Shown here piece by piece: positions 23,082 to 54,338 of a stretch of 64,000 nucleotides of DNA; positions within the stretch are counted from its first letter, which is position 1, and each line of letters starts with the position of its first letter. The translations under genes were made by a program, and so were the position numbers. The notes beneath the pieces are model-generated. The model was not told where the DNA came from, did no database searches, and saw only the letters and a program-made list of their open reading frames with translations. Location of the stretch: positions 124,001 to 188,000 of the IMG/VR virus record IMGVR_UViG_3300047499_000113; one strand, given 5' to 3'.

Positions 23082-23642
23082 GATCTTCCCGAGAAGGAGT
23101 TACGCGAGACCCTACAGCAGCTACGTGATACTGAACAAGTCGTCCGGCTGGCAGTGGACGACGGCCTCGGAGAGAGCATGTTTCCTGGTCTCGTCAGTGC
23201 CATCGAGGGACGCCCAGCATCCGCCAAGGCCATTGCGAACGAGATAGGAACGGATTCTATCTTTCTCGGGATGATGCTCCAGGAGAAGACCAAGGCGCAG
23301 GTGCTCCAGATCGTGCAGCAGACTCTTGCGCGCGGGGAGAAGATCCTCGCTGACAAAGTGAAGCCCGACGACCGCGAAGAGGTCCTCGCCGGCGAGAACT
23401 TTGGCGTGGTGTTCATGCCACCAGAGCTGCTGCGCCAGCTATGGGGCCTCGGAGAGGCGGTTGTGCACTTTCAGGAAGGGAAGAGCGAATCCAAGCGCGT
23501 GGAGCCACGAGCCATCAACGTGATGATGCTCGCCGCGCAGTGGGTTCGCGACGCCAGAACACGTTGGGGACTCCCCGACAGAGTAGAGAAGGTAGAGGTG
23601 GCTCCCCTATTGAAAGAGCCGCCCATGGAGCCGCCGTTCTAG
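23076..23642 (+). CDS. Hypothetical protein
   Basis: 188 aa. TAATCT 5 nt before the ATG. Confidence 0.7.
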   Translation: MHDLPEKELRETLQQLRDTEQVVRLAVDDGLGESMFPGLVSAIEGRPASAKAIANEIGTDSIFLGMMLQEKTKAQVLQIVQQTLARGEKILADKVKPDDREEVLAGENFGVVFMPPELLRQLWGLGEAVVHFQEGKSESKRVEPRAINVMMLAAQWVRDARTRWGLPDRVEKVEVAPLLKEPPMEPPF

Positions 23643-23953
23643 TGGATCTGCATCCGAATGGGCCGCAGGTTCTGCTTGACCTGGTCCATCTTATCCTCAA
23701 GCAATTCCCGCCGATCAGTCACTTCCTCATGGTGCATAGTCACGAGCTTGAGGATGGTCTCGAGAGCAGAATATGCGCCCTCGAGGAGCTTCACGGCTCG
23801 TTGTGGGTTGTCGCGTGAGGCCGCCTGAGTGAGAAGGTCGAGCTGACGCTTCAACTGCGTAATGATTTCTTCGACTTTGTCCGACTCGATGGGCGTGTCC
23901 TCTTCGGGGTCACCAGCAGCTACACGCGCGGCGATTTGCAGGAACCGGCCCAT
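23639..23953 (-). CDS. Small helical protein with N-terminal IAARVAA motif (probable internal head protein)
   Basis: Begins MGRFLQIAARVAAGDPEED. Confidence 0.7.
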   Translation of the reverse strand: MGRFLQIAARVAAGDPEEDTPIESDKVEEIITQLKRQLDLLTQAASRDNPQRAVKLLEGAYSALETILKLVTMHHEEVTDRRELLEDKMDQVKQNLRPIRMQIH

Positions 23954-24017
23954 CGGGGTATACTACTCTTGGACACAAAGGGTCGGAAATACGACCAGGT
24001 GGATAGTATCGAGGGAC

Positions 24018-24287
24018 ATGCGCAAAATCCCCATGCTCAAGTCGGTGCCTCTGGCTCCGAAGGTGTCGGTCGGGGTGCGCCGGCTCGCCGAGGGTTTGTA
24101 CAGGGTCCTTCTCGAGGACCTGACTCAGCGCCAAGCCTCCTACTTCGAAGTTGGAACCCTGCGCGACGGCGCCCTGACAGTCGGCGCCAATCCGCGGGGC
24201 CAAGCGGCAGTCAAGATGCCGGAGTTTCCGGCGGCGATTCAGGAGCTTTCGGACTTCACGACCGTTGACACGGTCATGTCAGAATAG
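24018..24287 (+). CDS. Hypothetical protein with C-terminal tag (DFTTVDTVMSE)
   Basis: Start set at ATG 24018 (GAGG upstream) to avoid overlap with the 23953 gene. Confidence 0.6.
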   Translation: MRKIPMLKSVPLAPKVSVGVRRLAEGLYRVLLEDLTQRQASYFEVGTLRDGALTVGANPRGQAAVKMPEFPAAIQELSDFTTVDTVMSE

Positions 24288-25243: not shown

Positions 25244-25255
25244 ATAAACAGCCTA
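25244..25255 (-). promoter_or_regulatory. Putative phage late-promoter motif TAGGCTGTTTAT (representative copy)
   Basis: Near-identical copies precede many virion genes (54643-54654, 55593-55604, 44162-44173, 12191-12202, 11113-11124 and others). Confidence 0.55.
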
Positions 25256-25789
25256 GGTCAGGTCGACGAGCTGGAAGTACCGAGACGGAACGTGGTCGGT
25301 GAGCCAGACTCCGTTGGTCGACAGGAAGAACTTGTAGCCGTCACGGAACATCTGGTCTGTCCAAATCTCGAGAACTATCGGGTTGCGACGACGCCGAGCC
25401 ACGATGAGGGCAGTCTTCACGTCCGGAGACATGTGGACGTGGTGACGCTGCATCTTCTTCAGGCCCTCTTGCTCGAGAACATCGAGGATGTCCTTCGACG
25501 TGCCGTGATACAGGCAATCCGGTGGTTCCTTCTCTTCGTACTCGAGGTCGACTTCCACCGAATGACCCTGGCAGGCACGAATGCGAGTCTTGTCCTCGTT
25601 GAATTCGAACCGCTTCTTGTTGTTGTCGCGAACGACCGCCTCGAGGTCGTCCATTGACCATTTCATCGCCGGCAGGAGCGCAGCGACTTCGACCCATCCA
25701 GCCGAATCGAGCGTGAGGCCGACGCTCTCGGGCTGATGGCGGAGCACCAGGCTCAGATGCTTGCTCTTGTGGACGAGAGGGTCTTTCAT
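25253..25789 (-). CDS. kptA: RNA 2'-phosphotransferase (KptA/Tpt1)
   Basis: SKHLSLVLRH, NNKKRF, RIRACQGHS, LYHGT, GLKKMQRHHVHMS and NGVWLTDHVP are the canonical Tpt1 motifs. Confidence 0.95.
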   Translation of the reverse strand: MKDPLVHKSKHLSLVLRHQPESVGLTLDSAGWVEVAALLPAMKWSMDDLEAVVRDNNKKRFEFNEDKTRIRACQGHSVEVDLEYEEKEPPDCLYHGTSKDILDVLEQEGLKKMQRHHVHMSPDVKTALIVARRRRNPIVLEIWTDQMFRDGYKFFLSTNGVWLTDHVPSRYFQLVDLT

Positions 25790-27799: not shown

Positions 27800-28090
27800 T
27801 TACAAGGCAGGGCCGGCGATTTCCCAACCCTTGTCGGCCTTGCGCAGGAAATGTAGCCCCTCGACGGGTACATCGTTCACGGATTCGATGCCGACCTCGA
27901 GGTCATCCTTGGTTTTGGGGATGTCGTTGGGGTAGGCGGGCTCTTTGAAGAGCTTGACTTTATGCTGACCGAGGAGACTGCGAACGTGATCGACGTTGTG
28001 CGCCTCGGCCAGAGCCTGATTGACCGTTTCGAATCCCGGCGACTGCGCGGCGACGCGAGATGCAATCGCAAAGAGCCGCTTCTGATTCAT
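27800..28090 (-). CDS. Small protein with N-terminal IASRVAA motif (probable internal head protein)
   Basis: Begins MNQKRLFAIASRVAAQ. GGGCTTCTAT motif and AGGA upstream. Confidence 0.7.
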   Translation of the reverse strand: MNQKRLFAIASRVAAQSPGFETVNQALAEAHNVDHVRSLLGQHKVKLFKEPAYPNDIPKTKDDLEVGIESVNDVPVEGLHFLRKADKGWEIAGPAL

Positions 28091-28131
28091 TTGTCCTGAT
28101 GAGGGATAGAAGCCCAAACGTAGGATCGAGA

Positions 28132-32190: not shown

Positions 32191-33081
32191 TCAGCGCGCG
32201 ACGATCAGGCGCACCAGGCCGCGGGGGTTGTACGCCCCGATGCCAAGGTTCTCGAACATTGAGAAACCTATTGTCCGCTCCTCGGGGTTGTCGGCCGAGA
32301 GAACCGTCAGCTCCGTGCGGACCGGGATGCGACCGAAGTGCTCCGGCTCACACGTGATGTAGACGACGCCGGCGGCGACGAGGCGGCTGACGATGAACTG
32401 GGCGTTCCAGCCCGTCGCCATCATGCCCGTCTTCCACAGCGTGGCCTGGCTCTCGATGTCGAGCACGTCGCGCCCGAACTTGCGGATGTCCGCGTAGTCG
32501 GTCGCGTTCATGTAGACGCGAGCGACGCGGAGGTCCTGCCGCTCGATCTCGGCGAACGCGTCCGCGAGAACGGCCGGAGAGATCGGAGCGATGACGGGGA
32601 CGTCGGGGTTGGTCTGCCCCGGCAGCTCGTCGAAGCCGTTGACGGCGAGCGCGTCCATGATGGAGAAGACGCGGTCGTCTTCTGCCGCCTGGACCTGCGC
32701 CTTGCCGAGGTCCTGCATACGCTTGAGGAGGTCGTACCGACGCTCCTTGATCTGCGTGAGCGGGGCCTTGGGCAGGGCGGCGATCTCGAAGAGCGGGAAG
32801 ATCACGCGCCGCGGCTTCATGACCGCGGTGATGCTCTCGCCCTCCTCACCGATGACGTACGCGGTGACATCCGGATCCTTGTCGTAGATCGGGAGAGCAC
32901 CGTCGGGCAGCTGCTCGACCAGGAAGGTCTTGCGACCCACGGACGAGTAGTCGCGCCGCTCGCGGAGCGGCTGGATCATGGACGCCGCGAGGCGCTTGCG
33001 ACCAGCCGAAGAGCCGATGAACTTGTCGACGACCTGCTCCTTGATCGTGTTGTCGACAACCTGAACGCCGAAGGGATTCAT
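32191..33081 (-). CDS. Major capsid protein (short HK97-fold type)
   Basis: 296 aa, extreme GC3 bias, terminator downstream, last in the protease-scaffold-decoration order. GRKRLAASMIQPLR...DY...GRK.FLVEQLPDGA.P.YD resembles, from memory, capsids of Bxz1/Myrna-like large myoviruses. Confidence 0.85.
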   Translation of the reverse strand: MNPFGVQVVDNTIKEQVVDKFIGSSAGRKRLAASMIQPLRERRDYSSVGRKTFLVEQLPDGALPIYDKDPDVTAYVIGEEGESITAVMKPRRVIFPLFEIAALPKAPLTQIKERRYDLLKRMQDLGKAQVQAAEDDRVFSIMDALAVNGFDELPGQTNPDVPVIAPISPAVLADAFAEIERQDLRVARVYMNATDYADIRKFGRDVLDIESQATLWKTGMMATGWNAQFIVSRLVAAGVVYITCEPEHFGRIPVRTELTVLSADNPEERTIGFSMFENLGIGAYNPRGLVRLIVAR

Positions 33082-34021: not shown

Positions 34022-35488
34022 TCACGGACGGTCCCAGAGGTTCTCCAGGGCCTGGTCGACCGACGCGGGCTTGCCGCGCTGGACCTGACCGATCTTCTTG
34101 GCGCCCTTCACGGAAGCCGTGCGGCCGACCGAGAAGTTGCCCATCTCGCGAGCGTGCTGCTCCTGCTCCGCAGCCTTGATCTGGCGCTGAGCCTGAACTT
34201 CCTCGTTGTCGCCGAAGAGGTTGTCCAGCTCGTCGCCATGCGAGGCCACGGCAGCCGCCGTGACGCCAGCCGGAGTCGCCTGGAGTTCGTCCTCCTCGTC
34301 GAAGGAGATGTCGGGCTGCGCACCCGTCGCGGTCGCCATCACCGGAGCGACAGGAGCCGCCGGTGCGGGAGCCGCCTCGAAGAGGGCCTGGAGGTCGTCG
34401 CCCGCGGGCACGCCCTGCTGACCCATCTCCTCCTTCAGCATCTGATCGAGCATCTGAAGCTCGGCAGGCGGAAGGTCGCCGCCCATGTGCGGCATGCCCA
34501 TCTCCTGCTGCTCCTCCTGCTCCTGGCCCTGCTGTTGCTGCTGGCCCATCATCGGATGCTGTGCCTGCTGCTCCTGCTGGCCCATCATCTGCTGCTGACC
34601 CTGCTGTTGCTGCTGGCCACGTTGCTGCTGCTGGCCCTGCTGCTCCTGCTGGGACTGCTGCTGCTGACCCTGCTGTTGCTGCTGCTGGGAGGTCTTGCCC
34701 TGCTGCTGCTCCTCCTCTTCCTCTTGCTGCTGCGCGACGCGAGCCGCAGCAACCTGCTTGAGGACAGACTTGAGGGTCGGGTCGTCGATCGTCATGATCG
34801 TCGACGCCAGCTGCTCGAGGGCCCGGTCAGCCGCCGACTCGCCGATGAGGAGAGCCGCAAGCTTGGTGCACGCCATCGCGCGGCGCGTCTTGTTCTCCGG
34901 CGTCAGCGCGTCGGGAGACACGGCGTCGAGGGCGCGGAGGGTCGAGACGACGACGCGGTCGGGCATCCCCATGAAGCCCATCGCCACTTCCTCGACGATC
35001 TTGTCGTTCGAGGTGCGCAGCATGGCACGGGTGATGCGCTCGACTGCCTTGGCCTTCTGCTCGGCCATGGCGCGCGGGTCAGCCGCAGTGGCAGGACGAC
35101 CAGCCGCCTCGTAGGTGCGACCAGCCTTCTCGCCCTGGGACTTGCCGGACGTGTTGCCCGAGAACGTCCCGGTGCCGTCCGGCTTGACGTTGTCGTACGT
35201 CCCCTTGCCCGAGTGCCAGTTGTCGGAGTCCTTGTGCTTGAAGGTGTTGTCGCGGAACTCGGCGAAGTTCAGCTCGTTCCGCTTGACGTGACCGCCCTCG
35301 TACTCCGCCTCGACATCACCGTAGCCGTGCCAGGACTCGGCCCAGCTGTCCGGGTCGCCCGACTCGTAGTCGGTCGGCTTGGGATCCGGGTGCTCCTGGT
35401 TCATCTTGTAGATGTCGGCTTGGCGTTGCGTCGCCGCCTGACGCGAGGTCGCGGCACCGTTGCCCTGCCAGGTGGAACGCGTACGCAT
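34022..35488 (-). CDS. Probable scaffolding protein with poly-Gln/Glu tract
   Basis: Sits between protease and decoration/capsid genes. AGGAG RBS before ATG 35488. Helical, low-complexity, ends ALENLWDRP. Confidence 0.65.
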   Translation of the reverse strand: MRTRSTWQGNGAATSRQAATQRQADIYKMNQEHPDPKPTDYESGDPDSWAESWHGYGDVEAEYEGGHVKRNELNFAEFRDNTFKHKDSDNWHSGKGTYDNVKPDGTGTFSGNTSGKSQGEKAGRTYEAAGRPATAADPRAMAEQKAKAVERITRAMLRTSNDKIVEEVAMGFMGMPDRVVVSTLRALDAVSPDALTPENKTRRAMACTKLAALLIGESAADRALEQLASTIMTIDDPTLKSVLKQVAAARVAQQQEEEEEQQQGKTSQQQQQQGQQQQSQQEQQGQQQQRGQQQQQGQQQMMGQQEQQAQHPMMGQQQQQGQEQEEQQEMGMPHMGGDLPPAELQMLDQMLKEEMGQQGVPAGDDLQALFEAAPAPAAPVAPVMATATGAQPDISFDEEDELQATPAGVTAAAVASHGDELDNLFGDNEEVQAQRQIKAAEQEQHAREMGNFSVGRTASVKGAKKIGQVQRGKPASVDQALENLWDRP

Positions 35489-39138: not shown

Positions 39139-40113
39139 TCAGCGGCCGGTCAGCTTGTAGATGACGGGCAGAAGCTTCGGCCGCAGAGCCGGACGAGCGT
39201 GTGCGTACCGGATGAAGATGCGCGCAGCCTTGATCTTGGCCGCGGCGAGTTCTGCCCGCTCCTCGTGAAGGAACGGCTTGACCTGGTTGAACAGCTCCTT
39301 GAGGAGCTTGACCGTCTTGCCCTCATCACCGGCGGCCTCCTGGAGGGACTCGCCGTACTGCGAGACGAGCATGCTGAGCTGCTCGGGAGAAGGCTTCTTG
39401 CCCTCCGGCTTCTTCTCCGGCTTCATCCCCTCTTCGGTGATCTCGATCTTTGGAGCCGGCTCGAGGAGATGCTCGCGGATGCCCTTCGCGAGGTTCTTGC
39501 CCTTGCGAATGAGGACTTCGACCTTCTTGAGGATGTCCTGGATGAGGCGCTTGTTCGGCTTGCGACGGGCCTCTTCCATCTCGGCCAGGATCTTCTCGAC
39601 GCCACCGAAATACGCGGCGTTCTCCTTGGCCTCCTCGTTGATGTAGTGCTCAGGATCCGCCCACTCACGCTTTCCCTCGATGAACTCGTCCATCGCGGAC
39701 TCGTCCATTTGGTACGACGGAGCGTTGGCCTTCATGTCTTCGGCCTGCTCCTCGAGCTTCTTCTGCGTGGGCTTGAAGACGTCCTTGAACTTCTTGAAGA
39801 AATCCTTGATGCCCGCGGTCGTCGAAACCTTCTTGAGCATCTGGCGGAGTTCTTCTTCCTCCGCCTCGGCCGCGTCCTCGAAGAACTTCGCGAATTCCTT
39901 CGCGTCCTCGGTGTCGAGCATCTTGAGCGCGTCTTCGAGTTCGTCCTTGAGGGACTCAAGGACAGTGATGCTGTTCTCGAGGCTCTGCTCCCACTTCTTG
40001 GCGCCCGGATTGATGACGGCAATCGCCTGGCGCTCCAGCTCGTAGCCGAGCAGAGGGTTGTACTGGCCAATTTGACGCGCCAGCTTCACCCGGCGCCATA
40101 CGGCGCGACTCAT
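39139..40113 (-). CDS. Probable internal head protein (helical, Glu/Lys-rich) with RxAHAxPxxRPxLLP module
   Basis: Start at ATG 40113 (MSRAVWRRVKLA), overlapping the upstream stop. Confidence 0.7.
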   Translation of the reverse strand: MSRAVWRRVKLARQIGQYNPLLGYELERQAIAVINPGAKKWEQSLENSITVLESLKDELEDALKMLDTEDAKEFAKFFEDAAEAEEEELRQMLKKVSTTAGIKDFFKKFKDVFKPTQKKLEEQAEDMKANAPSYQMDESAMDEFIEGKREWADPEHYINEEAKENAAYFGGVEKILAEMEEARRKPNKRLIQDILKKVEVLIRKGKNLAKGIREHLLEPAPKIEITEEGMKPEKKPEGKKPSPEQLSMLVSQYGESLQEAAGDEGKTVKLLKELFNQVKPFLHEERAELAAAKIKAARIFIRYAHARPALRPKLLPVIYKLTGR

Positions 40114-40875: not shown

Positions 40876-41424
40876 TCAGGGAGCCCAGGTCTTGCCGGCC
40901 GTCTTTGCCGGTGCGGCCGGACGCGCGGGACCCGAGCCGATGGCGGTGCTCTTGCCAGCCGGACCCTTCTCCCACGACGGCTGCTTCTTCGTGCCGCCGG
41001 CGTACTCGTTCAGGTCGCGCACCTGGAACTCGTCGCGGTCGGCAACGCTCGAGGAGATGTCGGCGTCGTACGTCTCCATGTCCTTCGTCGAGTTGTAGCC
41101 GTGCGGAGCCTTGTGCATGTACGGCTCGTCGGTGTCCGTCGTGATCGGCTTGATCGGGTTCTCGAAGGTCTTCATGTACTCTTCGTCGGAGTCACGCTGG
41201 ACGACCTTGGCCTGGATCAGCCTCGACGCACGCTTCTGCAGGTTCTCCTTGCCGAAAACGGCAATCTCGAACTTGTCAGCGAACGTGTCGATGTCGCGGT
41301 TGATGGCGCTCGCGAGACGCGGATCGATCTTGCCGGCCTTGGCAAGACCGTCCAGCTGCTCGGCGGTCGAGTCCAGGGTGTGAAGAACCCTGTTGGCGAT
41401 CTGCTTTTGCTGAGGGGTCGGCAT
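40876..41424 (-). CDS. Probable internal head protein
   Basis: 182 aa, GGAG RBS, strong codon bias, KRAS motif. Confidence 0.7.
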   Translation of the reverse strand: MPTPQQKQIANRVLHTLDSTAEQLDGLAKAGKIDPRLASAINRDIDTFADKFEIAVFGKENLQKRASRLIQAKVVQRDSDEEYMKTFENPIKPITTDTDEPYMHKAPHGYNSTKDMETYDADISSSVADRDEFQVRDLNEYAGGTKKQPSWEKGPAGKSTAIGSGPARPAAPAKTAGKTWAP

Positions 41425-41475: not shown

Positions 41476-44139
41476 CTACCACTTGATGTCGGATGGGTCG
41501 ATGGTGACGGCTGCCTTCTTCTTGCCGAAGGGAGGCGCCTTCTTGCCGCCAAACGGCGGGGCCTTCTTGCCACCGAACGGGGGCTTCTTGCCGCCCTTGC
41601 CGCCCTTGGCCTTGTCGCCGCCCTTCGCGAAGGGATTGGGCTTGTCGCCCTTCTTGCCCTTCTTCTTGGCCTTGTCCTTCTTGCGCTGCTCCTTCTTCTT
41701 CTTTTTCTTGCCGGCGGCGAGGATGATCGGCAGGAGCACCGGGCGGGCCTCCGGGTTGGCATGCGCGAGGCGAACGAGCGTGCTCATCGCCACCACGACG
41801 CTGCCGGTCTTGACGCCCTTGGCAGCCTGCTCGGCCTCCGAGAAGAGCGCGTCCATGCCCTCCATGAACTTCTCGATGTCGTTCTCCTGGAAGAGCTTCT
41901 TGGCTTCCGCCTTCTGCTTGTCGAGGAACGCCTTGACCTGCTCCTCGTCCATATCCTCGAGCGGCTCGAGGTCCATGATGGCGCCGGTCTGCTGCTCCTG
42001 ACCCTGCTGTTGCTGCTGACCCTGCTGTTGCTGTTGCTCTTGGGCAACGCGGGCAGTGCGGCCGGACGCGGTCTTCTTCAGAAGTTCGTCCATCTCCGTC
42101 AGACCATCGACGAAGTCCTCGATAGACTGCGCGTCGACGACCTGCTTGAGGTGGTTCTTGAGATCCTTGATGTCGACCTTGCCCTCGACAAAGTCGTCCA
42201 TGTCTTTGTCGTGGATCTGGCTCTGCTGCTGTTGCTGGCCCTGGACAGGGCCGCCAGCGGCCGGCGGAGGAGGCGGAGGAGCCATGCCGGGCGGGCCAGC
42301 CTCGGGCATGCACTGCTCGCCCTGCTGTTGCTGCTGACCCTGCTGCTCCTGCGAGCACATCTCCTGCTGCGAGTGGTGGGAGCCTTCCTGCTGCTCCTCT
42401 TCCTGCTCTTCCTCCTGCTGGGAGGTCTTGCCCTGCTGCTCCTCTTCCTCCTGCTGTTGCTCTTGCTGCTGAGCAACCATGGAGCGAAGGTTCTTCACGA
42501 TCTCGAGCGCCGCACGAGGGTCCGTCTTCCGCAGGTTGCTCGCAACCCGCAGGATGTTTTGGTAGTGGACATTGCTCATGGCGGAAGCTCTCCTCGATTT
42601 CGTGCTGTCGTCGTTCGTGATCAGGGTCTCAGAAAACACGTCAACCTTGTCGCCCATCAGGCGAGCAAGCAGCATGTTGTACGTCTCGCCGTCGATCTTG
42701 CCCTGGTAGAGATTGCTGTCGGCCAGGTGGATCGACAGGTCAAGCGCGGCGCGGAACGGTGCATCTTTGGCACCTGACTCCCACTCGAACTTGAGCCAAT
42801 CCTCCTGAAGCAGGTCCTTGGCGTGGGCAACGATGGAGTCGTAGTGCTCCTTGCCGAAGTACCGCTTGTCGATCGACTGGTATCCCTTGTACGGCCCGTT
42901 GGTCGGGTCGCCCTGCTGACGGACACCGTGATAGGTTGCAGTCTTCTGGCCCATAGCCTTACCTCGGAGGGCTCCATAAGAAGTTGCTGCACTCCTGTAC
43001 CCCTCGACCATCTTCTTGAGGGGCTCCGGAGCTTTCTTGAAGTCGTCCCCGAAGAAGCTCTCTATCCCATCGACAAATTCCCCAGGGTCGAAGACAGGGT
43101 CATCATCGTCCTTGAAGAACGACTTGAGGCTCTTCTGGACCTCGTCGTAGTATTCGCTGGCAGTGATGGTCTCGGGGTCGTCGTCTCCCTTGGCGAACTC
43201 GTGAATGGCCTTCTCCCACGATTTCATGAAGGTGGAGACAGCCAGGAGCTTCTGCATCTCGCCGTAGACCCGCTCGGTCTCCTTGTCGATATCGGCGACA
43301 AGATCTGCGGCATCCACCCGGATGGGATTGTCAAGTAGGGATCTGTAGGCGGCAACGAGGGTGGCAAGCTCGGTCCTGTCCTCCAGACTCTCCTCGCTGA
43401 TCTTGCCTTCGCTGGCCTCCTTGAGAACGTCCTCGAGGAGATTGGCACCTTTCTTCTTGTTGCCGGCCTCTCGAAGAGCTGTGGCTTTGATCGATGCCGG
43501 AGCCTTGAGGCTCTTGACCGACTCTTGGAGGGCTGCCAGCACGCCCGCCCGAGTAGCCCAATTGTTGGGCTTGTCGTTCGGCCACAGTGCCGCCACTTCG
43601 GCAGCGATTTCAGCTGGAGTACCTTTGAACTTCGTGTTCGCGGTCTTCTCGTAAATGCCGATGAGTTTCTTCATCCGGCCGACGAGGTCTTTCTGCGCGT
43701 CGAGCATCACCTTGTGCTGGTTGCCCTTGCCCTTTCCGGGCTTGCCGACCTTCGCCAGAGCCACTTGCGCGTAGTTCTTGCGGGCAAAGTCGTCGAACGC
43801 GTCCTGCAATTTCATCGATTGCAGGCCCAAGAGATGACTGAACTTATTGATCAGGCGATGAGCTTCCTCGCCCGGACCCGCGGGAGGCTGATGGCCTTCT
43901 TCCTCCTCTGTATCTGCCGCGACACGGGCCGCGATGTAGAAGAGTCGCGACGCCTGCGTCTTGCGCGACAGGTCCTTGTCAGTGGTTTCCTTGTCCGTGT
44001 GGTCCTTCATCCGGCGCCGGCGATTGTCATGCTTCGGCGCCCCACGACCCTTCGGCTTCCTACTCGGAGCAGGTTCCTTGTCGATCAGGCGTTCAATTTG
44101 CCTGTCGTCCTTCTCGGCAGGGGTCAGATCCGTGGGCAT
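41476..44139 (-). CDS. Large probable internal head protein (IAARVAA, poly-Gln, RLAHANP module, Lys-rich KKxPPFG repeats)
   Basis: 887 aa directly after the portal; multiple (K/R)xA motifs. Confidence 0.75.
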   Translation of the reverse strand: MPTDLTPAEKDDRQIERLIDKEPAPSRKPKGRGAPKHDNRRRRMKDHTDKETTDKDLSRKTQASRLFYIAARVAADTEEEEGHQPPAGPGEEAHRLINKFSHLLGLQSMKLQDAFDDFARKNYAQVALAKVGKPGKGKGNQHKVMLDAQKDLVGRMKKLIGIYEKTANTKFKGTPAEIAAEVAALWPNDKPNNWATRAGVLAALQESVKSLKAPASIKATALREAGNKKKGANLLEDVLKEASEGKISEESLEDRTELATLVAAYRSLLDNPIRVDAADLVADIDKETERVYGEMQKLLAVSTFMKSWEKAIHEFAKGDDDPETITASEYYDEVQKSLKSFFKDDDDPVFDPGEFVDGIESFFGDDFKKAPEPLKKMVEGYRSAATSYGALRGKAMGQKTATYHGVRQQGDPTNGPYKGYQSIDKRYFGKEHYDSIVAHAKDLLQEDWLKFEWESGAKDAPFRAALDLSIHLADSNLYQGKIDGETYNMLLARLMGDKVDVFSETLITNDDSTKSRRASAMSNVHYQNILRVASNLRKTDPRAALEIVKNLRSMVAQQQEQQQEEEEQQGKTSQQEEEQEEEQQEGSHHSQQEMCSQEQQGQQQQQGEQCMPEAGPPGMAPPPPPPAAGGPVQGQQQQQSQIHDKDMDDFVEGKVDIKDLKNHLKQVVDAQSIEDFVDGLTEMDELLKKTASGRTARVAQEQQQQQGQQQQQGQEQQTGAIMDLEPLEDMDEEQVKAFLDKQKAEAKKLFQENDIEKFMEGMDALFSEAEQAAKGVKTGSVVVAMSTLVRLAHANPEARPVLLPIILAAGKKKKKKEQRKKDKAKKKGKKGDKPNPFAKGGDKAKGGKGGKKPPFGGKKAPPFGGKKAPPFGKKKAAVTIDPSDIKW

Positions 44140-44177: not shown

Positions 44178-45971
44178 CTACTTCTCGCCCTCACCGCCGC
44201 CGAACCTGTCGCCCTTCTTCTTGGATAGTTTCAGTCCGGCAGCCGTGGCGACCTTCTCGAGGATATCAGTCTCCTCGAGGGCTTCCTCACCAGCCTTGGT
44301 CATGACGGTGCGCAGGAATTCATTGAAGTTGGCGTCATTCGGCGTGAACATATCGCGCTTGAGCTGCGCCAAAGTCTCGTCTGCGTCGATGTTGAGCAGC
44401 TCGAGGATGAACGAAATCGGCAACGACCCCTTGTTGTAGAGGTTGAACATGAAGTCCTGCAGCTCCGAGTTGTCACGCAGCGCAAGGCGCGTGAACTGGA
44501 GCTTGGGGTAAAGCAGGACTCGGTTGCCGTAGTCGTCCTCCTCCCAAAACCCCTTCTTCTCGGCGACCGGAGCAAACAAATAATCCTCGACGAATTGCGC
44601 GAGCGTCTCGCGATACAGCAGGTACATCGTGTTCATCACGTCGAGATGAATACGCTCGCCTGAATAAGTCGACTCTCCGGTGAGCATCGACTCGGTGATG
44701 CGCAGACCGATGAACAGAAGCTTGTTGGTGATTTCGTACTCGGTTCCGAGATCGAGGAGACGGTCGCGCGAGCCGACCTCGTCCCAGTGGACCTCGAAGT
44801 TCATGATGATGCTGAAGTCGGGGTCGATGAGCGCCTGGTCGATCTGGTCGCGCAGGTTCTCGACGTCCGGCTCCGACATCTTGTCGGCCCAAATGACGCG
44901 CTTGGGCGTCATCGCGCGCGATGCAATGGACGTCTGCGCCTGGCGCAGCTTGTCCTGATAGAGCAGAGTCCGCAGGCAGCGCTCGAGAATCGAGATGCCG
45001 CGGTCGTCGTAGGATGACTTCTTGTGCGTCAGGTGATAGCAGAAGGACGAGCACAGGAAGTCGTCATAGGGCGACGTGTTGAGCGGGATGGGCTGCCCGC
45101 TCAGGAGATTCTCACGGATCTGCTCCGGGATGTCCTCGGCAATCCGTGCAGACTCATCATCGTGCTGCTCTTGCGCCTTCATGACGACGATTCGGTCCTT
45201 CTCGGACGGAATCAGTTCCATCTTGGCGCGATTGGTATACTGGAAAACCTCGAGCTTGACCTGCTCCGGTGGAAGAATCTGGAGGCGCTCCCAGCCCCGG
45301 TAATTCTTGGCGACGTGCTCTCGAATGGCCTTGACTCGCTCGGTCTCGGGCTTGAGCGACTTCTTGCGTTCAATCTTGGTCTTCGCGCGGCCGGCGTAGT
45401 CAACCTCTCCAACTTCCTCTTCCTTGACGTCCGAGATCATCTCTTCGGTGATCTCTTCAGTCAGGTCGTGGTCCTCACAGAAGATGAAGACGTTGCCGTG
45501 CAGCCAGTATTCGTGCGTGGCATCGTAGAGCGTCTGGAACAGGCGAACCCGCTTGCACATCTGCTCGTAGAAGTGCAGGATGCGCTTGTTGCGGTCCAGA
45601 TCCTTGCCTTTCGGGAGCGAAAGACGGATCTTGGACATCGGCACATCGGTGTGAAAGTCGATGGCCGCGCCGACGATGGGGTGCGTGACGTACCAGAACC
45701 GAAACAGCTCGCGCTTTTCGCGCTCGGACTGCGGCAGCTCGAGGAAGTCGGTAGAAAGCTGCGGGCTGTAGAAGGCGGAGTCCGCGTTCGATATGGCTCC
45801 GCCGCCAGCATTGCCGAAGGTACCGCCGTACGCGGCGACACGGATGGACTGCGCCTGCTCCCGGCGAGCGAGCCTCTCGAGCTTCGTCAGCTTCTGTTTG
45901 GAGCCATTCTGCTGGTCAACAGAGTTGACCGGCATCGGGGGAGTGACTCCAACTTTCGGTTTCTTCGCCAT
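44178..45971 (-). CDS. Portal protein
   Basis: 597 aa after TerL. FWY..HPIVGAAIDFH...P, RG.SIL.R....L.Y.DKLR.AQ and YP.L.F..L.L.D are patterns of large-phage portals. Confidence 0.82.
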   Translation of the reverse strand: MAKKPKVGVTPPMPVNSVDQQNGSKQKLTKLERLARREQAQSIRVAAYGGTFGNAGGGAISNADSAFYSPQLSTDFLELPQSEREKRELFRFWYVTHPIVGAAIDFHTDVPMSKIRLSLPKGKDLDRNKRILHFYEQMCKRVRLFQTLYDATHEYWLHGNVFIFCEDHDLTEEITEEMISDVKEEEVGEVDYAGRAKTKIERKKSLKPETERVKAIREHVAKNYRGWERLQILPPEQVKLEVFQYTNRAKMELIPSEKDRIVVMKAQEQHDDESARIAEDIPEQIRENLLSGQPIPLNTSPYDDFLCSSFCYHLTHKKSSYDDRGISILERCLRTLLYQDKLRQAQTSIASRAMTPKRVIWADKMSEPDVENLRDQIDQALIDPDFSIIMNFEVHWDEVGSRDRLLDLGTEYEITNKLLFIGLRITESMLTGESTYSGERIHLDVMNTMYLLYRETLAQFVEDYLFAPVAEKKGFWEEDDYGNRVLLYPKLQFTRLALRDNSELQDFMFNLYNKGSLPISFILELLNIDADETLAQLKRDMFTPNDANFNEFLRTVMTKAGEEALEETDILEKVATAAGLKLSKKKGDRFGGGEGEK

Positions 45972-46473: not shown

Positions 46474-46733
46474 TACTTGGCGCGTGCCACCCTGGAAGCG
46501 ATGCTAGCAAGGCGACGGTTGTTGACGAATGCGTCAATTGCATCCTCGATGATCTTGACGCATCCCATGTCGCCACCCATGAGACGTTCCCAGGAGCCTC
46601 CGCGGGCCGCGTAGTCGTGGAATATCTTGACGAAGTCCTCGTTGGAGAGTTTGGTATCCGGCCCGTACACGTGATCCGTGATCTGCCGCACGATCTTGTA
46701 GGCAGTCGTGTCCTTGACGCCGGGCTCTTTCAT
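46473..46733 (-). CDS. Small protein with C-terminal IASRVA motif
   Basis: Ends NRRLASIASRVARAK. Confidence 0.65.
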   Translation of the reverse strand: MKEPGVKDTTAYKIVRQITDHVYGPDTKLSNEDFVKIFHDYAARGGSWERLMGGDMGCVKIIEDAIDAFVNNRRLASIASRVARAK

Positions 46734-51369: not shown

Positions 51370-51378
51370 GACCGTTGA

Positions 51379-52986
51379 TTACTCCCGCTCTTTTACGGGC
51401 TCGGACTTCATTCCTTTGAGCCACTCGTCGTGAGACATGCAGGATTGGCCGCTCTCTCGACAGCTCTTACAGTAAGCTTCGTAGGCGGTCTTGGTCGACT
51501 CCTTCATGGCGTCGTCGTAGCATTTCTCGGCTTCCTTGACGCTACCGTCACTGGCGATCCGGTCCATGTCGATGAGAGCGCGAGTCAGATTCGCCGCGAG
51601 TCGGCGGAGGACGCCGGCGACTTCGGGCTGCAGCACGTATCGGCACTCGAGATCGATGAGCTTGTTGCGGACCCTGGCCACCGTGGTGTTGCCAGCCGTC
51701 GACGCCGCACGCGCCACCGGGAACTCGTCGAGCACGTCTTTGACGAAGACGTTGTGCGAGAGTTTGAGGCACCGGATGATGTCCGATGACAGATATTGCG
51801 GCAGACCACGCGACTGCAGGAATGCCAGCACATGCCGCTTGGTCAGACCCTTCTTGCCGGCTTCCTTGAGGAAGTCCTTCGTCAGGGCCACGACCTGGTT
51901 GATGTTGGTTGCCTGCCTCGAGTTCATCGAAAGTCCTCCGGACGCAAACATGGTAACCCTATCACCGGTCACATCGGCACCAGGGAGCTGGGTTCCACCG
52001 TCCTGGTTGTCACTCCTGTCAAAGTTTATGTTCTCATCAAAGTCTGTTGCAGGAAACCCGTACGGACCCGATACGTCCTCGATCTCCTTGCCGGAAAGCC
52101 AGTTGCCGAGACTCTGGAGAAAATCGTCCATCGTCTCTTCGTTCTTCATCACCGTGGGAAGCGCAGAATCGGAAACTTTTTCCTTTTGACTTGTGTAGGC
52201 GCCGCTGTCCTGGGTGGGCGCCACATAGTCAGTGAAAAGAGCCCGCCTGCTCGACCCGGTATGACCGGGGTGCATATAATCGTAGTAGTCAGTCCGCGCC
52301 GCAGGATTATCACCATCGACAGGAAGCTCCGAGTGCTCTTCGGAAACTTTCTTGCCTTTGGGCCTGATGGCGCCAGGATCACGACCGTCGACGCCCTGCT
52401 CCTGCGGAAGCGTCGTAGCTTCCGCTACGGTCTCCACTCGAGCGTCGTAGACGTCGGTCTTCGGATGGAAGTGCTGGATGTTGGCGTCCTGGTCGCCCGG
52501 AACGAGGCCCACAGCAATGAAGCCGCGGTGCATGAGGGTCCCGAGACGTCCATCGTCACCGTCCGGATAGATTAGACTCCGGTCTGGATTGAAGACGTTG
52601 GCCGGCTGAGCATCTCCAATGGGAGGCTCGTGCTCGCAGTCCTCGTCGCAGACGTGGTCCGGCGGCAGAACGCCATTCGGAAGAGGTCCGAGGCGCATTG
52701 TCATCTCGGACACTGGTGATGTGTCGACCGACACTGGATAGCTGACAGTGCGGCTCTCCGGCTCGTTCGGATACGAGAGCCACTCCTCATCACCGGCCCC
52801 GTTGCCGGGGACCTCGATCTGCGATGACTTGGTGGCGTCGTCTGGCAGCGTGCGGCCTGCAGGCTCGTGCGCCTCAGAGTTCTCCCCGTGATCCCCTTCT
52901 TCGTCTCGCTGGGAATCGTAGGTCCCGATGCCCCAAGTATCGACTTGCTTGGGGAGGGTGCTCTCTGTGGGGAGTGTAGACGGCAT
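51379..52986 (-). CDS. Acidic probable internal head protein
   Basis: ATG at 52986 overlaps the upstream TGA; RQA/RAAS/RIAS motifs. Confidence 0.7.
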   Translation of the reverse strand: MPSTLPTESTLPKQVDTWGIGTYDSQRDEEGDHGENSEAHEPAGRTLPDDATKSSQIEVPGNGAGDEEWLSYPNEPESRTVSYPVSVDTSPVSEMTMRLGPLPNGVLPPDHVCDEDCEHEPPIGDAQPANVFNPDRSLIYPDGDDGRLGTLMHRGFIAVGLVPGDQDANIQHFHPKTDVYDARVETVAEATTLPQEQGVDGRDPGAIRPKGKKVSEEHSELPVDGDNPAARTDYYDYMHPGHTGSSRRALFTDYVAPTQDSGAYTSQKEKVSDSALPTVMKNEETMDDFLQSLGNWLSGKEIEDVSGPYGFPATDFDENINFDRSDNQDGGTQLPGADVTGDRVTMFASGGLSMNSRQATNINQVVALTKDFLKEAGKKGLTKRHVLAFLQSRGLPQYLSSDIIRCLKLSHNVFVKDVLDEFPVARAASTAGNTTVARVRNKLIDLECRYVLQPEVAGVLRRLAANLTRALIDMDRIASDGSVKEAEKCYDDAMKESTKTAYEAYCKSCRESGQSCMSHDEWLKGMKSEPVKERE

Positions 52987-54338
52987 CAGAACTGCGTCTC
53001 CCACAGGTTCGGAATTTCGAGCTTCGGCTTCTTGGGATTCAGGCCCGGCGGCGGGTCAGGCTGCGAATGCTCGCGCAGCCACTTGAGGTCTTCCTCGTTC
53101 ATTCCAAGCGCGTAGTAATCGAGATTTTTGCTGTTGTCGGCGCCCGGGAGCCACGAGTAGGTCTGCGGGAGAGCGGCCACCTTCGTGGCTACCGAGTTCA
53201 GGTCGACGCTCTCTGCGCTCTCCGTGTACGGGTCGCCGAGTCCCGTAGTGCCATCGAGCATCGCATCGTAGCCTTCCGGGAGCTGCTTCTCGGTGTTGAC
53301 GCCGCTGTCGAGTGCTTCCCCAGTGGGATCGTCCGAACCGTATTGCTCGTCGCCATTGAAGCCACCCTCACCCGGACCGATGTGCTCGATGCGGGGACCA
53401 GGCAGGCTGTCCGGATCCACCGATGAGTCCGCGACGCGAGTCGACGCCGTACGCATCTCGTACGCGCGCATTAGATGGGCAATGGCCGAAGCGTAATTGC
53501 CCTGCTCCGGCGTCGTGGTGTGCATCACCATTTCGACGGGGCTTTGGCCCTCGTGCTGTTCGCCCGTACCGCCCGGGAGTTGCGAGCCCTGCTCGCCGGG
53601 CTCCTCGGACTTCTTCTTTTTCTCGAGGATCTTCTTGTCGCGCTTGGCCGTGTCAGCGTAGCTGGAGAGCTGCATCTGGCCGTCGCCGCTGGCGTCGTTG
53701 TCCTCGGACGAACCCTCGTCACCCCAGCCATCGTTGTCGCCGTTGTCGGTCTCGTCGCTCTCGACCTGCGGGTTCATCTCGTCGGCGTTCGGGTTCTCGA
53801 CAGGCTCGTCGAAGGTTTCCTCGGGGTTCTCCTCCTGGAATTCCTCCTCGACAAAGCCGGCCGGATTCTGCTTGACCTCTTCGGTCTGGTCCAGAATCTC
53901 CTCGGCGGGCCCGGACTCTCCGGCGCCCTGCCAATGCGGAGCGTTGATTTCGTCGTCGACAGTATCGGTGAAGGACGAAAGCACCTCCGCCGCCTGCGCG
54001 AGCGACTGGCGCATGTCCTTGATGTTCTGGATATAACCACGGCCACCGAGCAGTCCGTCCGGGCTGATCTGCGCGGACGGCATCTTGGAGAAGAGCCGGA
54101 AGGCCGCCATGGCGTAGCTCTGAGCACGCTGGCTGGCCCACAAGATCTTGGCAAGTTCTCGCAGCGCCTCGGGAGTCCACTGGAAGTCCTGAACGCGGAT
54201 GTCGCGCCGGATCGGACCGGTGTCCTTGACGAACTCGATCTTGCCGGCCGTCCTGACTTGCGGCTTGCCGCGCACTCCGGCCACACGCATGGCGTGGCGA
54301 ATGAGGACACCAGCGGCGATTCGAGAAAGGCGGTCCAT
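52986..54338 (-). CDS. Acidic probable internal head protein
   Basis: Begins MDRLSRIAA...MRVA...VRTA; also RTAS, RVA and KVA motifs. Confidence 0.72.
   Translation of the reverse strand: MDRLSRIAAGVLIRHAMRVAGVRGKPQVRTAGKIEFVKDTGPIRRDIRVQDFQWTPEALRELAKILWASQRAQSYAMAAFRLFSKMPSAQISPDGLLGGRGYIQNIKDMRQSLAQAAEVLSSFTDTVDDEINAPHWQGAGESGPAEEILDQTEEVKQNPAGFVEEEFQEENPEETFDEPVENPNADEMNPQVESDETDNGDNDGWGDEGSSEDNDASGDGQMQLSSYADTAKRDKKILEKKKKSEEPGEQGSQLPGGTGEQHEGQSPVEMVMHTTTPEQGNYASAIAHLMRAYEMRTASTRVADSSVDPDSLPGPRIEHIGPGEGGFNGDEQYGSDDPTGEALDSGVNTEKQLPEGYDAMLDGTTGLGDPYTESAESVDLNSVATKVAALPQTYSWLPGADNSKNLDYYALGMNEEDLKWLREHSQPDPPPGLNPKKPKLEIPNLWETQF

What the first reader, a model, noticed from the sequence alone, without database searches (positions are those of the whole stretch)
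23639..54338. Shared IAxRVA helix and (K/R)-x-A motifs: candidate capsid-targeting and protease-cleavage signal for internal head proteins
Seen: RFLQIAARVAA (23953, N-terminus), RLFAIASRVAA (28090, N-terminus), RLFYIAARVAA (887-aa protein), RLASIASRVAR (46473-46733, C-terminus), RLSRIAA...MRVA (54338), LASRIARRRFA (SWIM protein), QVAAARVAQ (scaffold). RTA/KTA/RQA/RVA/KVA/RRA recur at domain junctions of head-region proteins, including the portal (IRVAA) and the protease itself (KKAASVQRRAQ) just before its acidic Gln-rich tail. Established: T4 (I/L-x-E) and phiKZ (S/A/G-x-E) prohead proteases cut many internal proteins at short motifs, and T4 uses an N-terminal capsid-targeting sequence. Inference: this phage uses a basic-x-Ala equivalent, and isolated accessory genes carrying it are packaged cargo injected into the host.
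Basis: partly seen in the sequence, partly recalled or inferred. Interest (0 to 1): 0.8.

Follow-up and report, generated by a model that had tools for sequence, protein, structure and literature searches.

The report
Shared terminal tag on phage proteins
An uncultivated jumbo phage puts the same 11-residue helix (R-L/F-x-x-I-A-A/S-R-V-A-A) at the ends of at least eight otherwise unrelated proteins, which looks most like an address tag that loads proteins into the forming capsid, although no experiment yet shows this.

Summary
Four near-identical copies of R[LF]xxIA[AS]RVA lie exactly where stated (0 expected in 500 shuffles). Their codons differ, so selection acts on the peptide. Three more N-terminal copies lie elsewhere on the same 240-kb contig. 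Orthologues show that the split 450-aa N-terminus is a degenerate copy. With the tag removed, the carriers share no similarity. Orthologues keep variant tags at the same positions. A 427-kb relative has a tandem array of small acidic ORFs beside the capsid gene, each starting MN[LF]S[KR]IASRIAA.

Generic (K/R)-x-A is near background (249 vs 220±13). A narrower motif, [KR][TVI]A[SA], is enriched (15 vs 5.2; 0/1000). It is conserved at junctions in the scaffold (RTAS, 30 residues from the C-terminus), portal N-terminus, protease C-terminus and three other head-module proteins. The tag ends in this motif.

Best reading (about 0.5): a T4-CTS-like prohead-targeting tag with a built-in maturation site. 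Nothing shows packaging or cleavage. A second, longer tag (LIRLAHxNPxLRxxLLPLL) is multi-copy in related huge phages and is absent from Pfam and PHROGs.

The parts
23915..23947 (-). Tag copy 1 (RFLQIAARVAA), residues 3-13 of the 104-aa acidic protein (gene 23639-23953)
   Evidence: A stop lies 5 codons upstream, so the N-terminal position is forced. Five homologues at 65-91% identity keep the tag, followed by a variable Pro/acidic linker.
28046..28078 (-). Tag copy 2 (RLFAIASRVAA), residues 5-15 from the ATG at 28090 of a ~96-aa protein (ORF 27800-28117)
   Evidence: The orthologue in L172 starts MDQKRLFAIAARIAG.
43915..43947 (-). Tag copy 3 (RLFYIAARVAA), residues 65-75 of the 887-aa protein F887 (gene 41476-44139, immediately downstream of the portal), after a conserved basic N-terminal segment
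   Evidence: Orthologues keep sL..IA[AL][RK][VI] at the same place, followed by a linker of variable length.
46482..46514 (-). Tag copy 4 (RLASIASRVAR) at the C-terminus of the 86-aa protein F86 (gene 46473-46733, between the large terminase and the portal)
   Evidence: 14 of 27 orthologues end in R.L.[KR][IVM]A.[RK][IVL][AS]. The AF2 model (pLDDT 90.6) places the tag at the end of a long C-terminal helix, residues 56-85.
54276..54332 (-). Degenerate, split tag (RLSRIAA-GVLIRHAM-RVAG) at the N-terminus of the 450-aa protein F450 (gene 52986-54338)
   Evidence: Orthologues have a contiguous N-terminal tag, alignment A2 consensus DLxKIAxRVAxxSGxVRTAGKIEF. AF2 gives a helix at residues 3-20 followed by a disordered stretch (low confidence).
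40054..40113 (-). Degenerate tag-like N-terminus (MSRAVWRRVKLARQIGQYNP) of F425 (ORF 39139-40416, likely start at the ATG at 40113)
   Evidence: Orthologues read LLRIAARLEATDPLL or KLMEIASRVSSSNPIL at this position.
34112..34123 (-). R-T-A-S in the 499-aa scaffold-like protein (gene 34022-35521), 30 residues from its C-terminus. Candidate maturation site ahead of the conserved tail GAKKIGQV...LENLWDRP
   Evidence: R[TVI]AS is kept in about 55 orthologues while the flanks vary and carry indels. Motif statistics.
45831..45845 (-). I-R-V-A-A at portal residues 43-47 (gene 44178-45971). It ends a conserved N-terminal helix and precedes a variable Gly-rich linker and the portal core
   Evidence: S[IV]R[VILM]A[AS] is conserved in about 25 orthologues. 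Distant portals (LR745208, phage G) align only from residue ~67.
35538..35552 (-). G-R-I-A-S, 3 residues from the C-terminus of the putative prohead protease
   Evidence: KG[RK]IAS is conserved in about 50 orthologues of the subclade and replaced by KGRLYAL in the more distant clade.
54243..54254 (-). R-T-A-G in F450 (residues 29-32), in a predicted unstructured stretch between the tag helix and the helical domain
   Evidence: These are invariant columns R29 T30 A31 G32 in A2. AF2 disorder over residues 21-55 (low confidence).
53430..53453 (-). R-T-A-S-T-R-V-A in F450 (residues 296-303), a double basic-x-Ala element in a disordered region
   Evidence: orthologues: RTASSRTADSS, RLASNRRADSS.
42052..42075 (-). 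K-T-A-S-G-R-T-A in F887 (residues 689-696)
   Evidence: KKTA[SAG] is conserved in orthologues.
42934..42945 (-). K-T-A-T in F887 (residues 399-402), at the start of the conserved central domain ([KR]TAxYHG)
   Evidence: In short orthologues it follows the tag by only 15-25 residues.
40894..40905 (-). K-T-A-G, 5 residues from the C-terminus of the 182-aa protein (gene 40876-41424)
   Evidence: Orthologues read PRTASIKTWAP, PRTASAGKTWAP, PKTASKPAKTW.
41710..41784 (-). Second shared motif (LVRLAHANPEARPVLLP) near the C-terminus of F887, followed by a Lys-rich tail
39142..39216 (-). Second shared motif (FIRYAHARPALRPKLLP) at the C-terminus of F425
35526..38330 (-). Putative prohead protease (934 aa), interrupted by an intein (36606-37781) directly after the conserved SMG serine motif
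   Evidence: Weak PHROG protease hit. Homology to Tunturi_5 gp331, annotated 'head maturation protease'. Pfam LAGLIDADG, Hint and intein domains. Invariant His and SMG in alignment A3.
32191..33081 (-). Major capsid protein (296 aa, phrog_2522). It is the most conserved head protein and so a candidate receptor for the tag
   Evidence: 89-94% identity to relatives that keep the tag core, against 34-51% for the scaffold.

Best explanation
The R-[L/F]-x-x-I-A-[A/S]-R-[V/I]-A-[A/S] peptide is a portable, short amphipathic docking helix. Its conserved face is L, I, A, V, A, with an i/i+4 Ala pair and two Arg residues.

This jumbo-phage lineage attaches it to the N-terminus, and occasionally the C-terminus or a flexible N-terminal region, of a varied set of proteins. 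I propose that it addresses them to one common, highly conserved receptor in the assembling prohead. The receptor could be the capsid-protein interior, the protease or the portal.

Conserved head-module proteins (F450, F887, F86, F425) and lineage-specific small acidic accessory proteins all use the tag. The tag ends in R-[V/I]-A-[A/S]. This is the same basic-[T/V/I]-Ala-[Ser/Ala] element that is conserved at module junctions of the scaffold, portal, protease and other head-module proteins. That element is therefore the likely recognition site of the prohead protease, which would cut after Ala and release the cargo from its anchor. This parallels T4, whose capsid targeting sequence ends in the gp21 site.

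Shown: the motif is real, is selected at the peptide level, is portable, is conserved, and is concentrated in and next to the head module. Inferred: the receptor, the packaging, the cleavage, and any injection into the host.
For: Motif enrichment and peptide-level selection.

Across all of IMG/VR the exact DNA pattern gives 40 stretches. Five sites lie on this one 240-kb contig, and the same sites recur on a second contig that carries identical head proteins. Most other hits are off-frame.

There are three further N-terminal carriers outside the window. With the tags removed, no pair of carriers is similar (all E > 0.02).

Tags are kept at orthologous positions in F86, F887, F450, F425 and the 104-aa family. 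A tandem array of 6-7 small ORFs, each starting M(M)N[LF]S[KR]IASRIAA, lies directly downstream of the capsid gene in L222.

The PSSM finds 51 distinct contexts against 5-6 for reversed or shuffled matrices in 2.6 Mb, with 19 N-terminal and 11 C-terminal.

The tag core stays nearly constant between genomes whose capsid protein is 89-94% identical while the scaffold is 34-51% identical.

[KR][TVI]A[SA] is enriched. It is conserved in the scaffold C-terminal region, the portal N-terminus, the protease C-terminus, the 182-aa protein, F450 and F887.

T4 precedent for a 10-residue CTS that ends in the protease site and is shared by divergent internal proteins: PMC9026906.
Against: There are no virion proteomics, N-terminomics or structures for this lineage. 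The cultured relatives (phage G, Tunturi_5) lack the tag in the 40-kb head regions examined, so there is no experimental anchor.

The tagged small proteins are acidic (pI 4.0-5.6 for most). T4 internal proteins are basic, and acidic proteins are awkward companions for packed DNA.

Some carriers lie far from the head module, at contig positions ~30 kb and ~100 kb, among unannotated genes.

Within-genome co-variation of the tags between families is weak (combined p about 0.05).

The protease assignment rests on weak homology, with no Pfam or PDB hit. There is no conserved residue right after the tag. R-x-A-A/S is also a common helix pattern, and part of its enrichment comes from the tag itself.
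Confidence: 0.5

Rival explanations
1. The tag is an assembly or oligomerisation helix that knits scaffold-like proteins into the prohead core, either tag-to-tag or tag-to-scaffold. The small acidic tagged proteins are transient scaffold or chaperone components that leave at maturation. They are not injected cargo, and no cleavage at the tag is needed.
For: The AxxxA-type small-residue face favours close helix-helix packing (direct reading of the sequence). F425, F887, the scaffold and the protease share Q/E-rich low-complexity segments typical of scaffolds. The tagged small proteins are acidic, as scaffolds are. F425 and F887 also carry a helix-Pro-helix motif at or near the C-terminus, which resembles the coat-binding ends of scaffolds.
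Against: It is unclear why a hyper-variable tandem array of unrelated small proteins would all be scaffold parts. Such variability is typical of host-interaction cargo. The tag ends in the motif that also marks the scaffold, portal and protease junctions.
Confidence: 0.2
2. The tag docks its carriers onto a partner that has nothing to do with the capsid. Candidates are a host protein (RNA polymerase, ribosome, a defence protein), a phage-encoded hub or compartment, or the protease acting as a regulator.
For: Carriers occur in at least three separate genome regions. The neighbouring genes there have no structural annotation. None of the carriers has any known domain.
Against: Four conserved carriers are encoded between the terminase, portal, protease and capsid genes. 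Arrays of tagged ORFs abut the capsid gene. The motif is absent from all other viral contigs in frame, which argues against a widely conserved host target.
Confidence: 0.2
3. The tag is a degradation or turnover signal read by a Clp or Lon-type protease, used to time the life of accessory proteins.
For: It is a terminal, short, basic-hydrophobic peptide. Phage G-type phages encode ClpXP (PMC12484599).
Against: The same peptide also works internally (F887) and at a C-terminus (F86). It sits on conserved, presumably stable, head-module proteins. It does not resemble the known ClpX N- or C-motifs beyond general character (my own knowledge, not tested). No Clp genes were seen in the window.
Confidence: 0.06
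4. It is a chance or compositional effect of an Arg/Ala-rich proteome, or just the conserved N-terminus of one paralogous family.
For: The genome is 60% G+C, and Ala, Leu and Arg are the commonest residues.
Against: 0 of 500 shuffles reach even one copy of the strict motif. Reversed and shuffled PSSM controls give 5-6 hits against 51. The carriers are unrelated once the tag is removed. The tag is conserved in orthologues with different codons.
Confidence: 0.02

Closest known systems
[quoted passage not shown]
   Same: It is a ~10-residue N-terminal peptide shared by small, otherwise divergent proteins. The carrier genes are variable between related phages. The peptide ends in the prohead protease's recognition motif. 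The carriers are encoded with or near the head genes.
   Different: There is no sequence resemblance (MKTYQEFIAE and L/I-x-E in T4, against R-L-x-x-I-A-A-R-V-A-A here). The capsid-protein and protease lineages differ (phage-G-like, not T4-like). Here the tag also occurs C-terminally and internally, and on conserved head-module proteins. The carriers are acidic rather than basic. Packaging and cleavage are untested here.
Encapsulin cargo-loading (targeting) peptides
   Same: They are short terminal peptides, N- or C-terminal, that address unrelated cargo proteins to the lumen of an HK97-fold shell. They are portable between proteins.
   Different: The consensus differs (Gly/Ser/Leu-rich extended peptides, from my own knowledge, against a basic amphipathic helix here). 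Encapsulins have no protease step and no portal or DNA. Binding to the capsid protein is only one of several candidate receptors here.
Herpesvirus scaffold maturation (M) site, (V/L/I)-x-A|S about 25 residues from the scaffold C-terminus, cut by assemblin. Phage prohead proteases are homologous to the herpesvirus protease (Cheng et al. 2004, cited in PMC10052503)
   Same: The scaffold-like protein here has a conserved R-[T/V/I]-A-S about 30 residues from its C-terminus, ahead of a highly conserved tail. The putative protease has the His-then-Ser order with about 55 residues between them.
   Different: P3 is basic here. Cleavage has not been shown. The protease has no detectable sequence match to solved assemblin or gp21 structures.
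phiKZ and SPN3US prohead protease propeptides (PMC10052503, PMC5694885)
   Same: These are jumbo phages in which many head and ejection proteins carry N-terminal propeptides that are removed at a short consensus motif.
   Different: Those sites end in Glu (S/A/G-x-E). No shared targeting helix has been described for them. The phage lineage is different.
P22-type scaffolding protein C-terminal helix-loop-helix that binds coat protein (compare with the second motif, LIRLAHxNPxLRxxLLPLL)
   Same: It is a basic helix-turn-helix at the C-terminus of helical, acidic, scaffold-like proteins (F425, F887).
   Different: In related huge phages the same module is mostly N-terminal and sits on many different proteins, which is unlike any described scaffold. 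There is no sequence similarity, and the comparison rests on my own knowledge.

Membership tests
T4-type capsid targeting sequence | A short N-terminal peptide shared by otherwise unrelated or divergent small proteins | tested here: met
   At least 5 N-terminal carriers in this phage and an array of 6-7 in L222. There is no similarity once the tag is removed.
T4-type capsid targeting sequence | The peptide ends in the prohead protease's cleavage consensus and is removed on maturation | tested here: inconclusive
   The tag ends in R-[VI]-A-[AS]. This matches the motif conserved in the scaffold, portal and protease. No cleavage data exist.
T4-type capsid targeting sequence | Sequence relationship to the T4 CTS and the gp21 L/I-x-E site | tested here: not met
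   Direct comparison of the motif with the CTS and cleavage logo described in PMC9026906 shows no resemblance.
T4-type capsid targeting sequence | The peptide is sufficient to load a foreign protein into the head, and the carriers are present in virions | not testable with these tools
   This needs tag-GFP packaging and virion mass spectrometry.
Encapsulin cargo-loading peptide | A terminal peptide on diverse cargo that binds the lumen of an HK97-fold shell protein | tested here: inconclusive
   Terminal and portable: met. The capsid protein belongs to a major-head-protein family (phrog_2522).
Encapsulin cargo-loading peptide | The characteristic Gly/Ser/Leu-rich consensus | tested here: not met
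   The tag consensus is a basic amphipathic helix.
Assemblin/HK97/T4-type prohead serine protease with a short cleavage motif | Protease family membership by sequence or structure | tested here: inconclusive
   Only a weak PHROG hit (E 4.5e-4) and homology to an annotated protease. No Pfam hit. No PDB hit with a profile. There is an invariant His and an SMG serine motif about 55 residues apart.
Assemblin/HK97/T4-type prohead serine protease with a short cleavage motif | A short motif recurring at junctions of the scaffold, portal, protease and internal proteins | tested here: met
   [KR][TVI]A[SA]: 15 against 5.2 expected (0/1000). It is conserved in orthologues amid variable flanks.
Assemblin/HK97/T4-type prohead serine protease with a short cleavage motif | Actual cleavage at those sites | not testable with these tools
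   This needs N-terminomics or in vitro cleavage.

The most novel reading that the evidence does not exclude
A large clade of uncultivated huge phages runs a modular cargo-addressing system. It has two related terminal tags: the 11-residue IAxRVA helix in this subclade, and a ~28-residue M-x-x-LRSKLIRLAHxNPxLRxxLLPLLK module in the LR745208-like subclade, with up to 11 copies per genome. These tags load dozens of otherwise unrelated, fast-evolving accessory proteins into the capsid for co-injection with the DNA. An assemblin-like protease that cuts after basic-[T/V/I]-Ala releases them.
Probability: 0.3. Interest if true: 0.8.

Novelty: new variant of a known kind. Interest (0 to 1): 0.66.

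Why it matters
If the tag is a loading signal, it gives a sequence-only way to list the packaged, possibly injected, proteins of a large group of huge phages that nobody has cultivated. It points to hyper-variable arrays of small acidic proteins as candidate host-takeover or anti-defence cargo. It would supply a second portable capsid-loading tag after T4's CTS, for a different capsid lineage, which could be used to load foreign proteins. It also gives a concrete, testable cleavage motif (R/K-[T/V/I]-A|S/A) for a protease family with no characterised member. Even if the receptor turns out to be something else, one short peptide shared by unrelated proteins, conserved across many genomes and absent from Pfam, PHROGs and the searched literature, is a clear handle on the unknown biology of these phages.

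Tried and rejected
**A DNA-level repeat** as the cause. Rejected because the codons differ between copies.

**Close nucleotide relatives in GenBank phages.** None were found. Only protein-level relatives exist: LR745208, Tunturi_5 and phage G.

**The tag in those three relatives.** It is absent from their 40-kb head regions.

**Paralogy.** Rejected.

**Other IMG/VR pattern hits as independent carriers.** Most are antisense or off-frame inside longer ORFs.

**Within-genome co-variation of tags between families**, as evidence for a common receptor. The signal is weak (combined p 0.05; only the F86-F450 pair reaches 0.02).

**Function from domains.** Pfam and PHROGs find nothing for any carrier. 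The ESM Atlas gave no usable lead.

**Function from fold.** The F86 model is confident, but no PDB fold matched. The F450 model is poor.

**Protease family.** No PDB or Pfam match.

**Orthologues of the 318-aa and 205-aa neighbours.** Only the phage itself was found, so those regions are lineage-specific.

**Phage G multi-omics paper.** It has no cleavage-site information.

**Literature search for the motif strings.** No paper.

**Complex prediction of tag plus candidate receptors.** It could not be run with the tools on hand.

Full report
**Context.** The window is part of an uncultivated jumbo phage. Its portal and neighbouring genes are 100% identical to IMGVR_UViG_3300047499_000113 (240 kb). 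The window corresponds to about contig 124,001-188,000.

The head module lies on the minus strand. In order it holds:
- F450 (52986-54338);
- proteins of 541, 681 and 199 aa;
- the large terminase (46758-48740);
- F86 (46473-46733);
- a 155-aa protein;
- the portal (44178-45971);
- F887 (41476-44139);
- a 182-aa protein;
- F425 (39139-40416);
- a putative prohead protease interrupted by an intein (35526-38330);
- a 499-aa scaffold-like protein (34022-35521);
- a 232-aa protein;
- the major capsid protein (32191-33081).

The capsid protein is 75% identical to that of LR745208.1 (485 kb, metagenomic), 46% to Tunturiibacter phage Tunturi_5 and 36% to Bacillus phage G. IMG/VR holds at least 483 relatives of this capsid protein.

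**The observation.** Every quoted peptide is present (re-translated).

Four copies match R[LF]xxIA[AS]RVA exactly:
- the N-terminus of a 104-aa protein;
- the N-terminus of a ~96-aa protein (ATG at 28090);
- residues 65-75 of F887;
- the C-terminus of F86.

Per-protein shuffles of the 71 predicted proteins never produce a single copy (0 of 500). A position matrix finds 4 at >=15 bits against 0.03 expected. The four copies use different codons for the same residues, so the constraint is on the peptide and not on DNA or RNA.

**More copies in the same phage.** I scanned all of IMG/VR for the back-translated pattern R-[L/F]-x-x-I-A-[A/S]-R-V-A-A. It returned 40 stretches.
- Five sites are on this one contig. 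The same sites recur on a second contig that carries identical head proteins.
- Most other hits lie antisense or off-frame within longer ORFs.
- Two of the five sites are outside the window. One is a 205-aa protein starting MELSRLLRIAARVAAT. The other is a ~102-aa protein starting MRLESIAARVAAS.
- A third, looser copy starts a ~226-aa protein next to the latter (MSTRDMSLLSLAARVAS).

With the tags cut off, no two of the sixteen carriers compared resemble each other (all E > 0.02). The tag is therefore a portable module and not the conserved end of a paralogous family.

**Conservation in relatives.** In 35 loci fetched with the portal (70-100% identical), each family keeps the tag at its own position:

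| Family | Position | What orthologues show |
|---|---|---|
| F86 | C-terminus | 14 of 27 orthologues end in R.L.[KR][IVM]A.[RK][IVL][AS] |
| F887 | ~residue 65-80, after a very conserved basic N-terminus | sL..IA[AL][RK][VI], followed by a linker of variable length |
| F450 | N-terminus | Start with the tag; consensus DLxKIAxRVAxxSGxVRTAGKIEF. The window's split version is a degenerate copy |
| F425 | N-terminus | LLRIAARLEATDPLL-type |
| 104-aa protein | N-terminus | Five homologues (65-91% identity) keep the tag, then a variable Pro/acidic linker, then a conserved helical body |

The clearest case is a 427-kb relative (L222; capsid protein 89% identical). It has a tandem array of six to seven small ORFs immediately downstream of its capsid gene. 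Each starts M(M)N[LF]S[KR]IASRIAA, often with a stop codon one or two codons upstream. The proteins are otherwise unrelated and strongly acidic.

Over 2.6 Mb of related loci the tag matrix finds 51 distinct contexts, against 5-6 for reversed or column-shuffled matrices. Nineteen are N-terminal and 11 are C-terminal. About half of the 51 were used to build the matrix, so the excess among new contexts is about 27 against 5-6.

The tag is not seen in the LR745208-like subclade (capsid protein about 75% identical), in Tunturi_5 or in phage G, within the regions examined.

**Physical character.** The conserved positions (R1, L2, I5, A6, R8, V9, A10) fall on one face of a helix, with an Ala-x-x-x-Ala pair suited to tight helix packing (direct reading of the sequence).
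- The F86 family model is confident (pLDDT 90.6). The tag forms the free end of a long C-terminal helix. No solved structure shares the fold.
- The F450 model is poor (pLDDT 49.8). It predicts an N-terminal helix over the tag, followed by an unstructured but invariant stretch, RTAGxIEFxxDxGPxRRD.

**The cleavage-motif part.** Generic [KR]-x-A is barely above shuffles (249 against 220 +/- 13). Split by the middle residue, only Thr and Val stand out, and only in head-module proteins (10 against 3.9 and 12 against 5.1).

All six [KR]TA[SGT] in the 71 proteins fall in four head-module proteins: the scaffold, the 182-aa protein, F887 and F450. Three of these proteins share [KR]TAS.[KR].A (3 against 0.01 expected). 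This pattern was defined post hoc.

[KR][TVI]A[SA] occurs 15 times against 5.15 +/- 2.2 (0 of 1000 shuffles). Three of the 15 are tags.

Orthologue alignments are more telling:
- In about 55 scaffolds, R-[T/V/I]-A-S is nearly constant about 30 residues from the C-terminus. Its flanks vary and carry indels. It precedes a conserved tail, GAKKlGxV...LExLWdRP.
- The portal has S-[IV]-R-[VILM]-A-[AS] at residues 42-47. This ends a conserved N-terminal helix, and a variable Gly-rich linker follows. More distant portals align only from residue ~67.
- The protease ends in KG[RK]IAS plus 1-3 residues in the whole subclade.
- The 182-aa protein ends in [KR]-[TQS]-A-[SG]...KTWAP.
- F450 and F887 keep RTAG, RTASxRxA, KTAxYHG and KKTA[SAG].

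These are the classes of protein that prohead proteases process in other phages. The site near the scaffold C-terminus parallels the herpesvirus M-site, (V/L/I)-x-A|S (my own knowledge; the homology of phage and herpesvirus proteases is cited in PMC10052503). The tag itself ends in R-[V/I]-A-[A/S].

The capsid protein N-arm also has GR[KR][RKH][LI]A[AS]S. That stretch is invariant even in Tunturi_5 and is likely structural.

No result here shows cleavage.

**Which receptor?** The tag core stays almost the same between genomes in which head proteins have diverged by very different amounts:

| Protein | Identity between genomes |
|---|---|
| Capsid protein | 89-94% |
| Protease catalytic part | 73-86% |
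| Portal | 72-84% |
| Scaffold | 34-51% |

By inference, the receptor is one of the first three. Co-variation of the tags across families within genomes is weak (combined p about 0.05) and does not settle this.

**Interpretation.** The best-supported reading is a prohead-targeting tag with a built-in maturation site, functionally like the T4 capsid targeting sequence. That sequence is a 10-residue propeptide shared by divergent internal proteins. It targets them to the scaffolding core, and gp21 removes it (PMC9026906). I give this about 0.5.

The rivals are:
- a core-assembly helix without cargo delivery;
- a docking helix for a non-capsid partner;
- a degron;
- chance, which the controls exclude.

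Points against the leading reading:
- There are no proteomic data.
- The tag is absent from the cultured relatives.
- The small carriers are acidic: pI 4.0-5.6 for most, against a median of 8.1 for small proteins of the window.
- Some carriers sit in distant, unannotated regions.
- The protease assignment is weak.

**A second tag (outside the original finding).** F887 (residues ~786-806, before a Lys-rich tail) and F425 (C-terminus) share L[IV]R[LY]AHxxPxxRPxLLP.

An IMG/VR-wide scan for IRLAHxNPxLR gave 66 stretches, almost all on huge-phage contigs, with several copies per contig. Of 74 in-frame matches, 60 have a Met within 14 residues upstream. The consensus is M-x-x-LRSK[LV]IRLAHxNPxLRxxLLPLLK, and it sits on proteins of about 80-460 aa.

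LR745208.1 holds 11 places, and no other GenBank phage record holds any. Neither Pfam nor PHROGs models this motif.

The F425 N-terminus (LLRIAARLEATDPLL...) and a third element in F887 (ILRVASNLRKTDPRAA) look intermediate between the two tags. The short tag may therefore be a trimmed relative of the longer helix-Pro-helix module. This is an inference only.

**Novelty.** No paper in the searchable library contains either motif string, and no curated family covers the carriers. The concept of a terminal loading tag plus a protease site is known from T4, and more loosely from encapsulins and herpesvirus scaffolds. The sequence, the lineage, the dual N- and C-terminal use and the breadth of carriers are new. 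I therefore rate it a new variant of a known kind.

Noticed in passing
window 41710-41784(-) and 39142-39216(-); L002 18740 and 26367; L248-L313: A second shared motif, L[IV]R[LY]AHxxPxxRxxLLP, occurs near the C-terminus of F887 and at the C-terminus of F425. In related huge phages it is a ~28-residue N-terminal module (M-x-x-LRSKLIRLAHxNPxLRxxLLPLLK) on many different proteins. 60 of 74 matches are N-terminal, there are several copies per contig, and LR745208.1 has 11 places. It is not in Pfam or PHROGs and is in no other GenBank phage.
   Followed up: partly
window 36606-37781(-) within 35526-38330: The putative prohead protease carries an intein with a LAGLIDADG homing endonuclease. It is inserted directly after the conserved SMG serine motif (SMG|C...SN|C). 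Relatives (LR745208, Tunturi_5, phage G) lack it.
   Followed up: partly
L222 8295-11129 (+), IMGVR_UViG_3300028920_000001: A tandem array of 6-7 small, strongly acidic (pI 4.0-4.6), mutually unrelated ORFs lies directly downstream of the capsid gene. Each starts with the tag M(M)N[LF]S[KR]IASRIAA. These are candidate packaged or host-interaction proteins.
   Followed up: partly
window 34022-35521, 41476-44139, 35526-38330 (all minus strand): The scaffold-like protein, F887 and the protease share Gln/Glu(/Gly)-rich low-complexity segments. The scaffold and F887 share near-identical short DNA stretches (17-49 nt at 90-100% identity) and the peptide EEEQQ(Q)GKTSQQ.
   Followed up: no
window 42508-42576(-): F887 residues ~522-544 (YQNILRVASNLRKTDPRAA...IVKNLRS) form a third conserved helix-x-DP-helix element. 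It is intermediate in form between the short tag and the longer motif, and is conserved in about 25 orthologues.
   Followed up: no
window 1-6000: The first ~6 kb have 67-69% G+C against about 60% for the rest. Their ORFs show high GC1 (0.75-0.81), which suggests a region of different origin or composition.
   Followed up: no
window 25253-25789(-): An RNA 2'-phosphotransferase (Tpt1/KptA-like, phrog_5470, E 2e-62) lies between the two small tagged genes, in a region with no orthologues in other IMG/VR contigs.
   Followed up: no
window 44178-45971(-), residues 1-66: The portal has a ~47-residue N-terminal extension (…LTKLEKLARREQAQSIRVAA) plus a Gly-rich linker. Both are conserved in the subclade but absent from the alignable part of the LR745208 and phage G portals. 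This may be a propeptide.
   Followed up: partly
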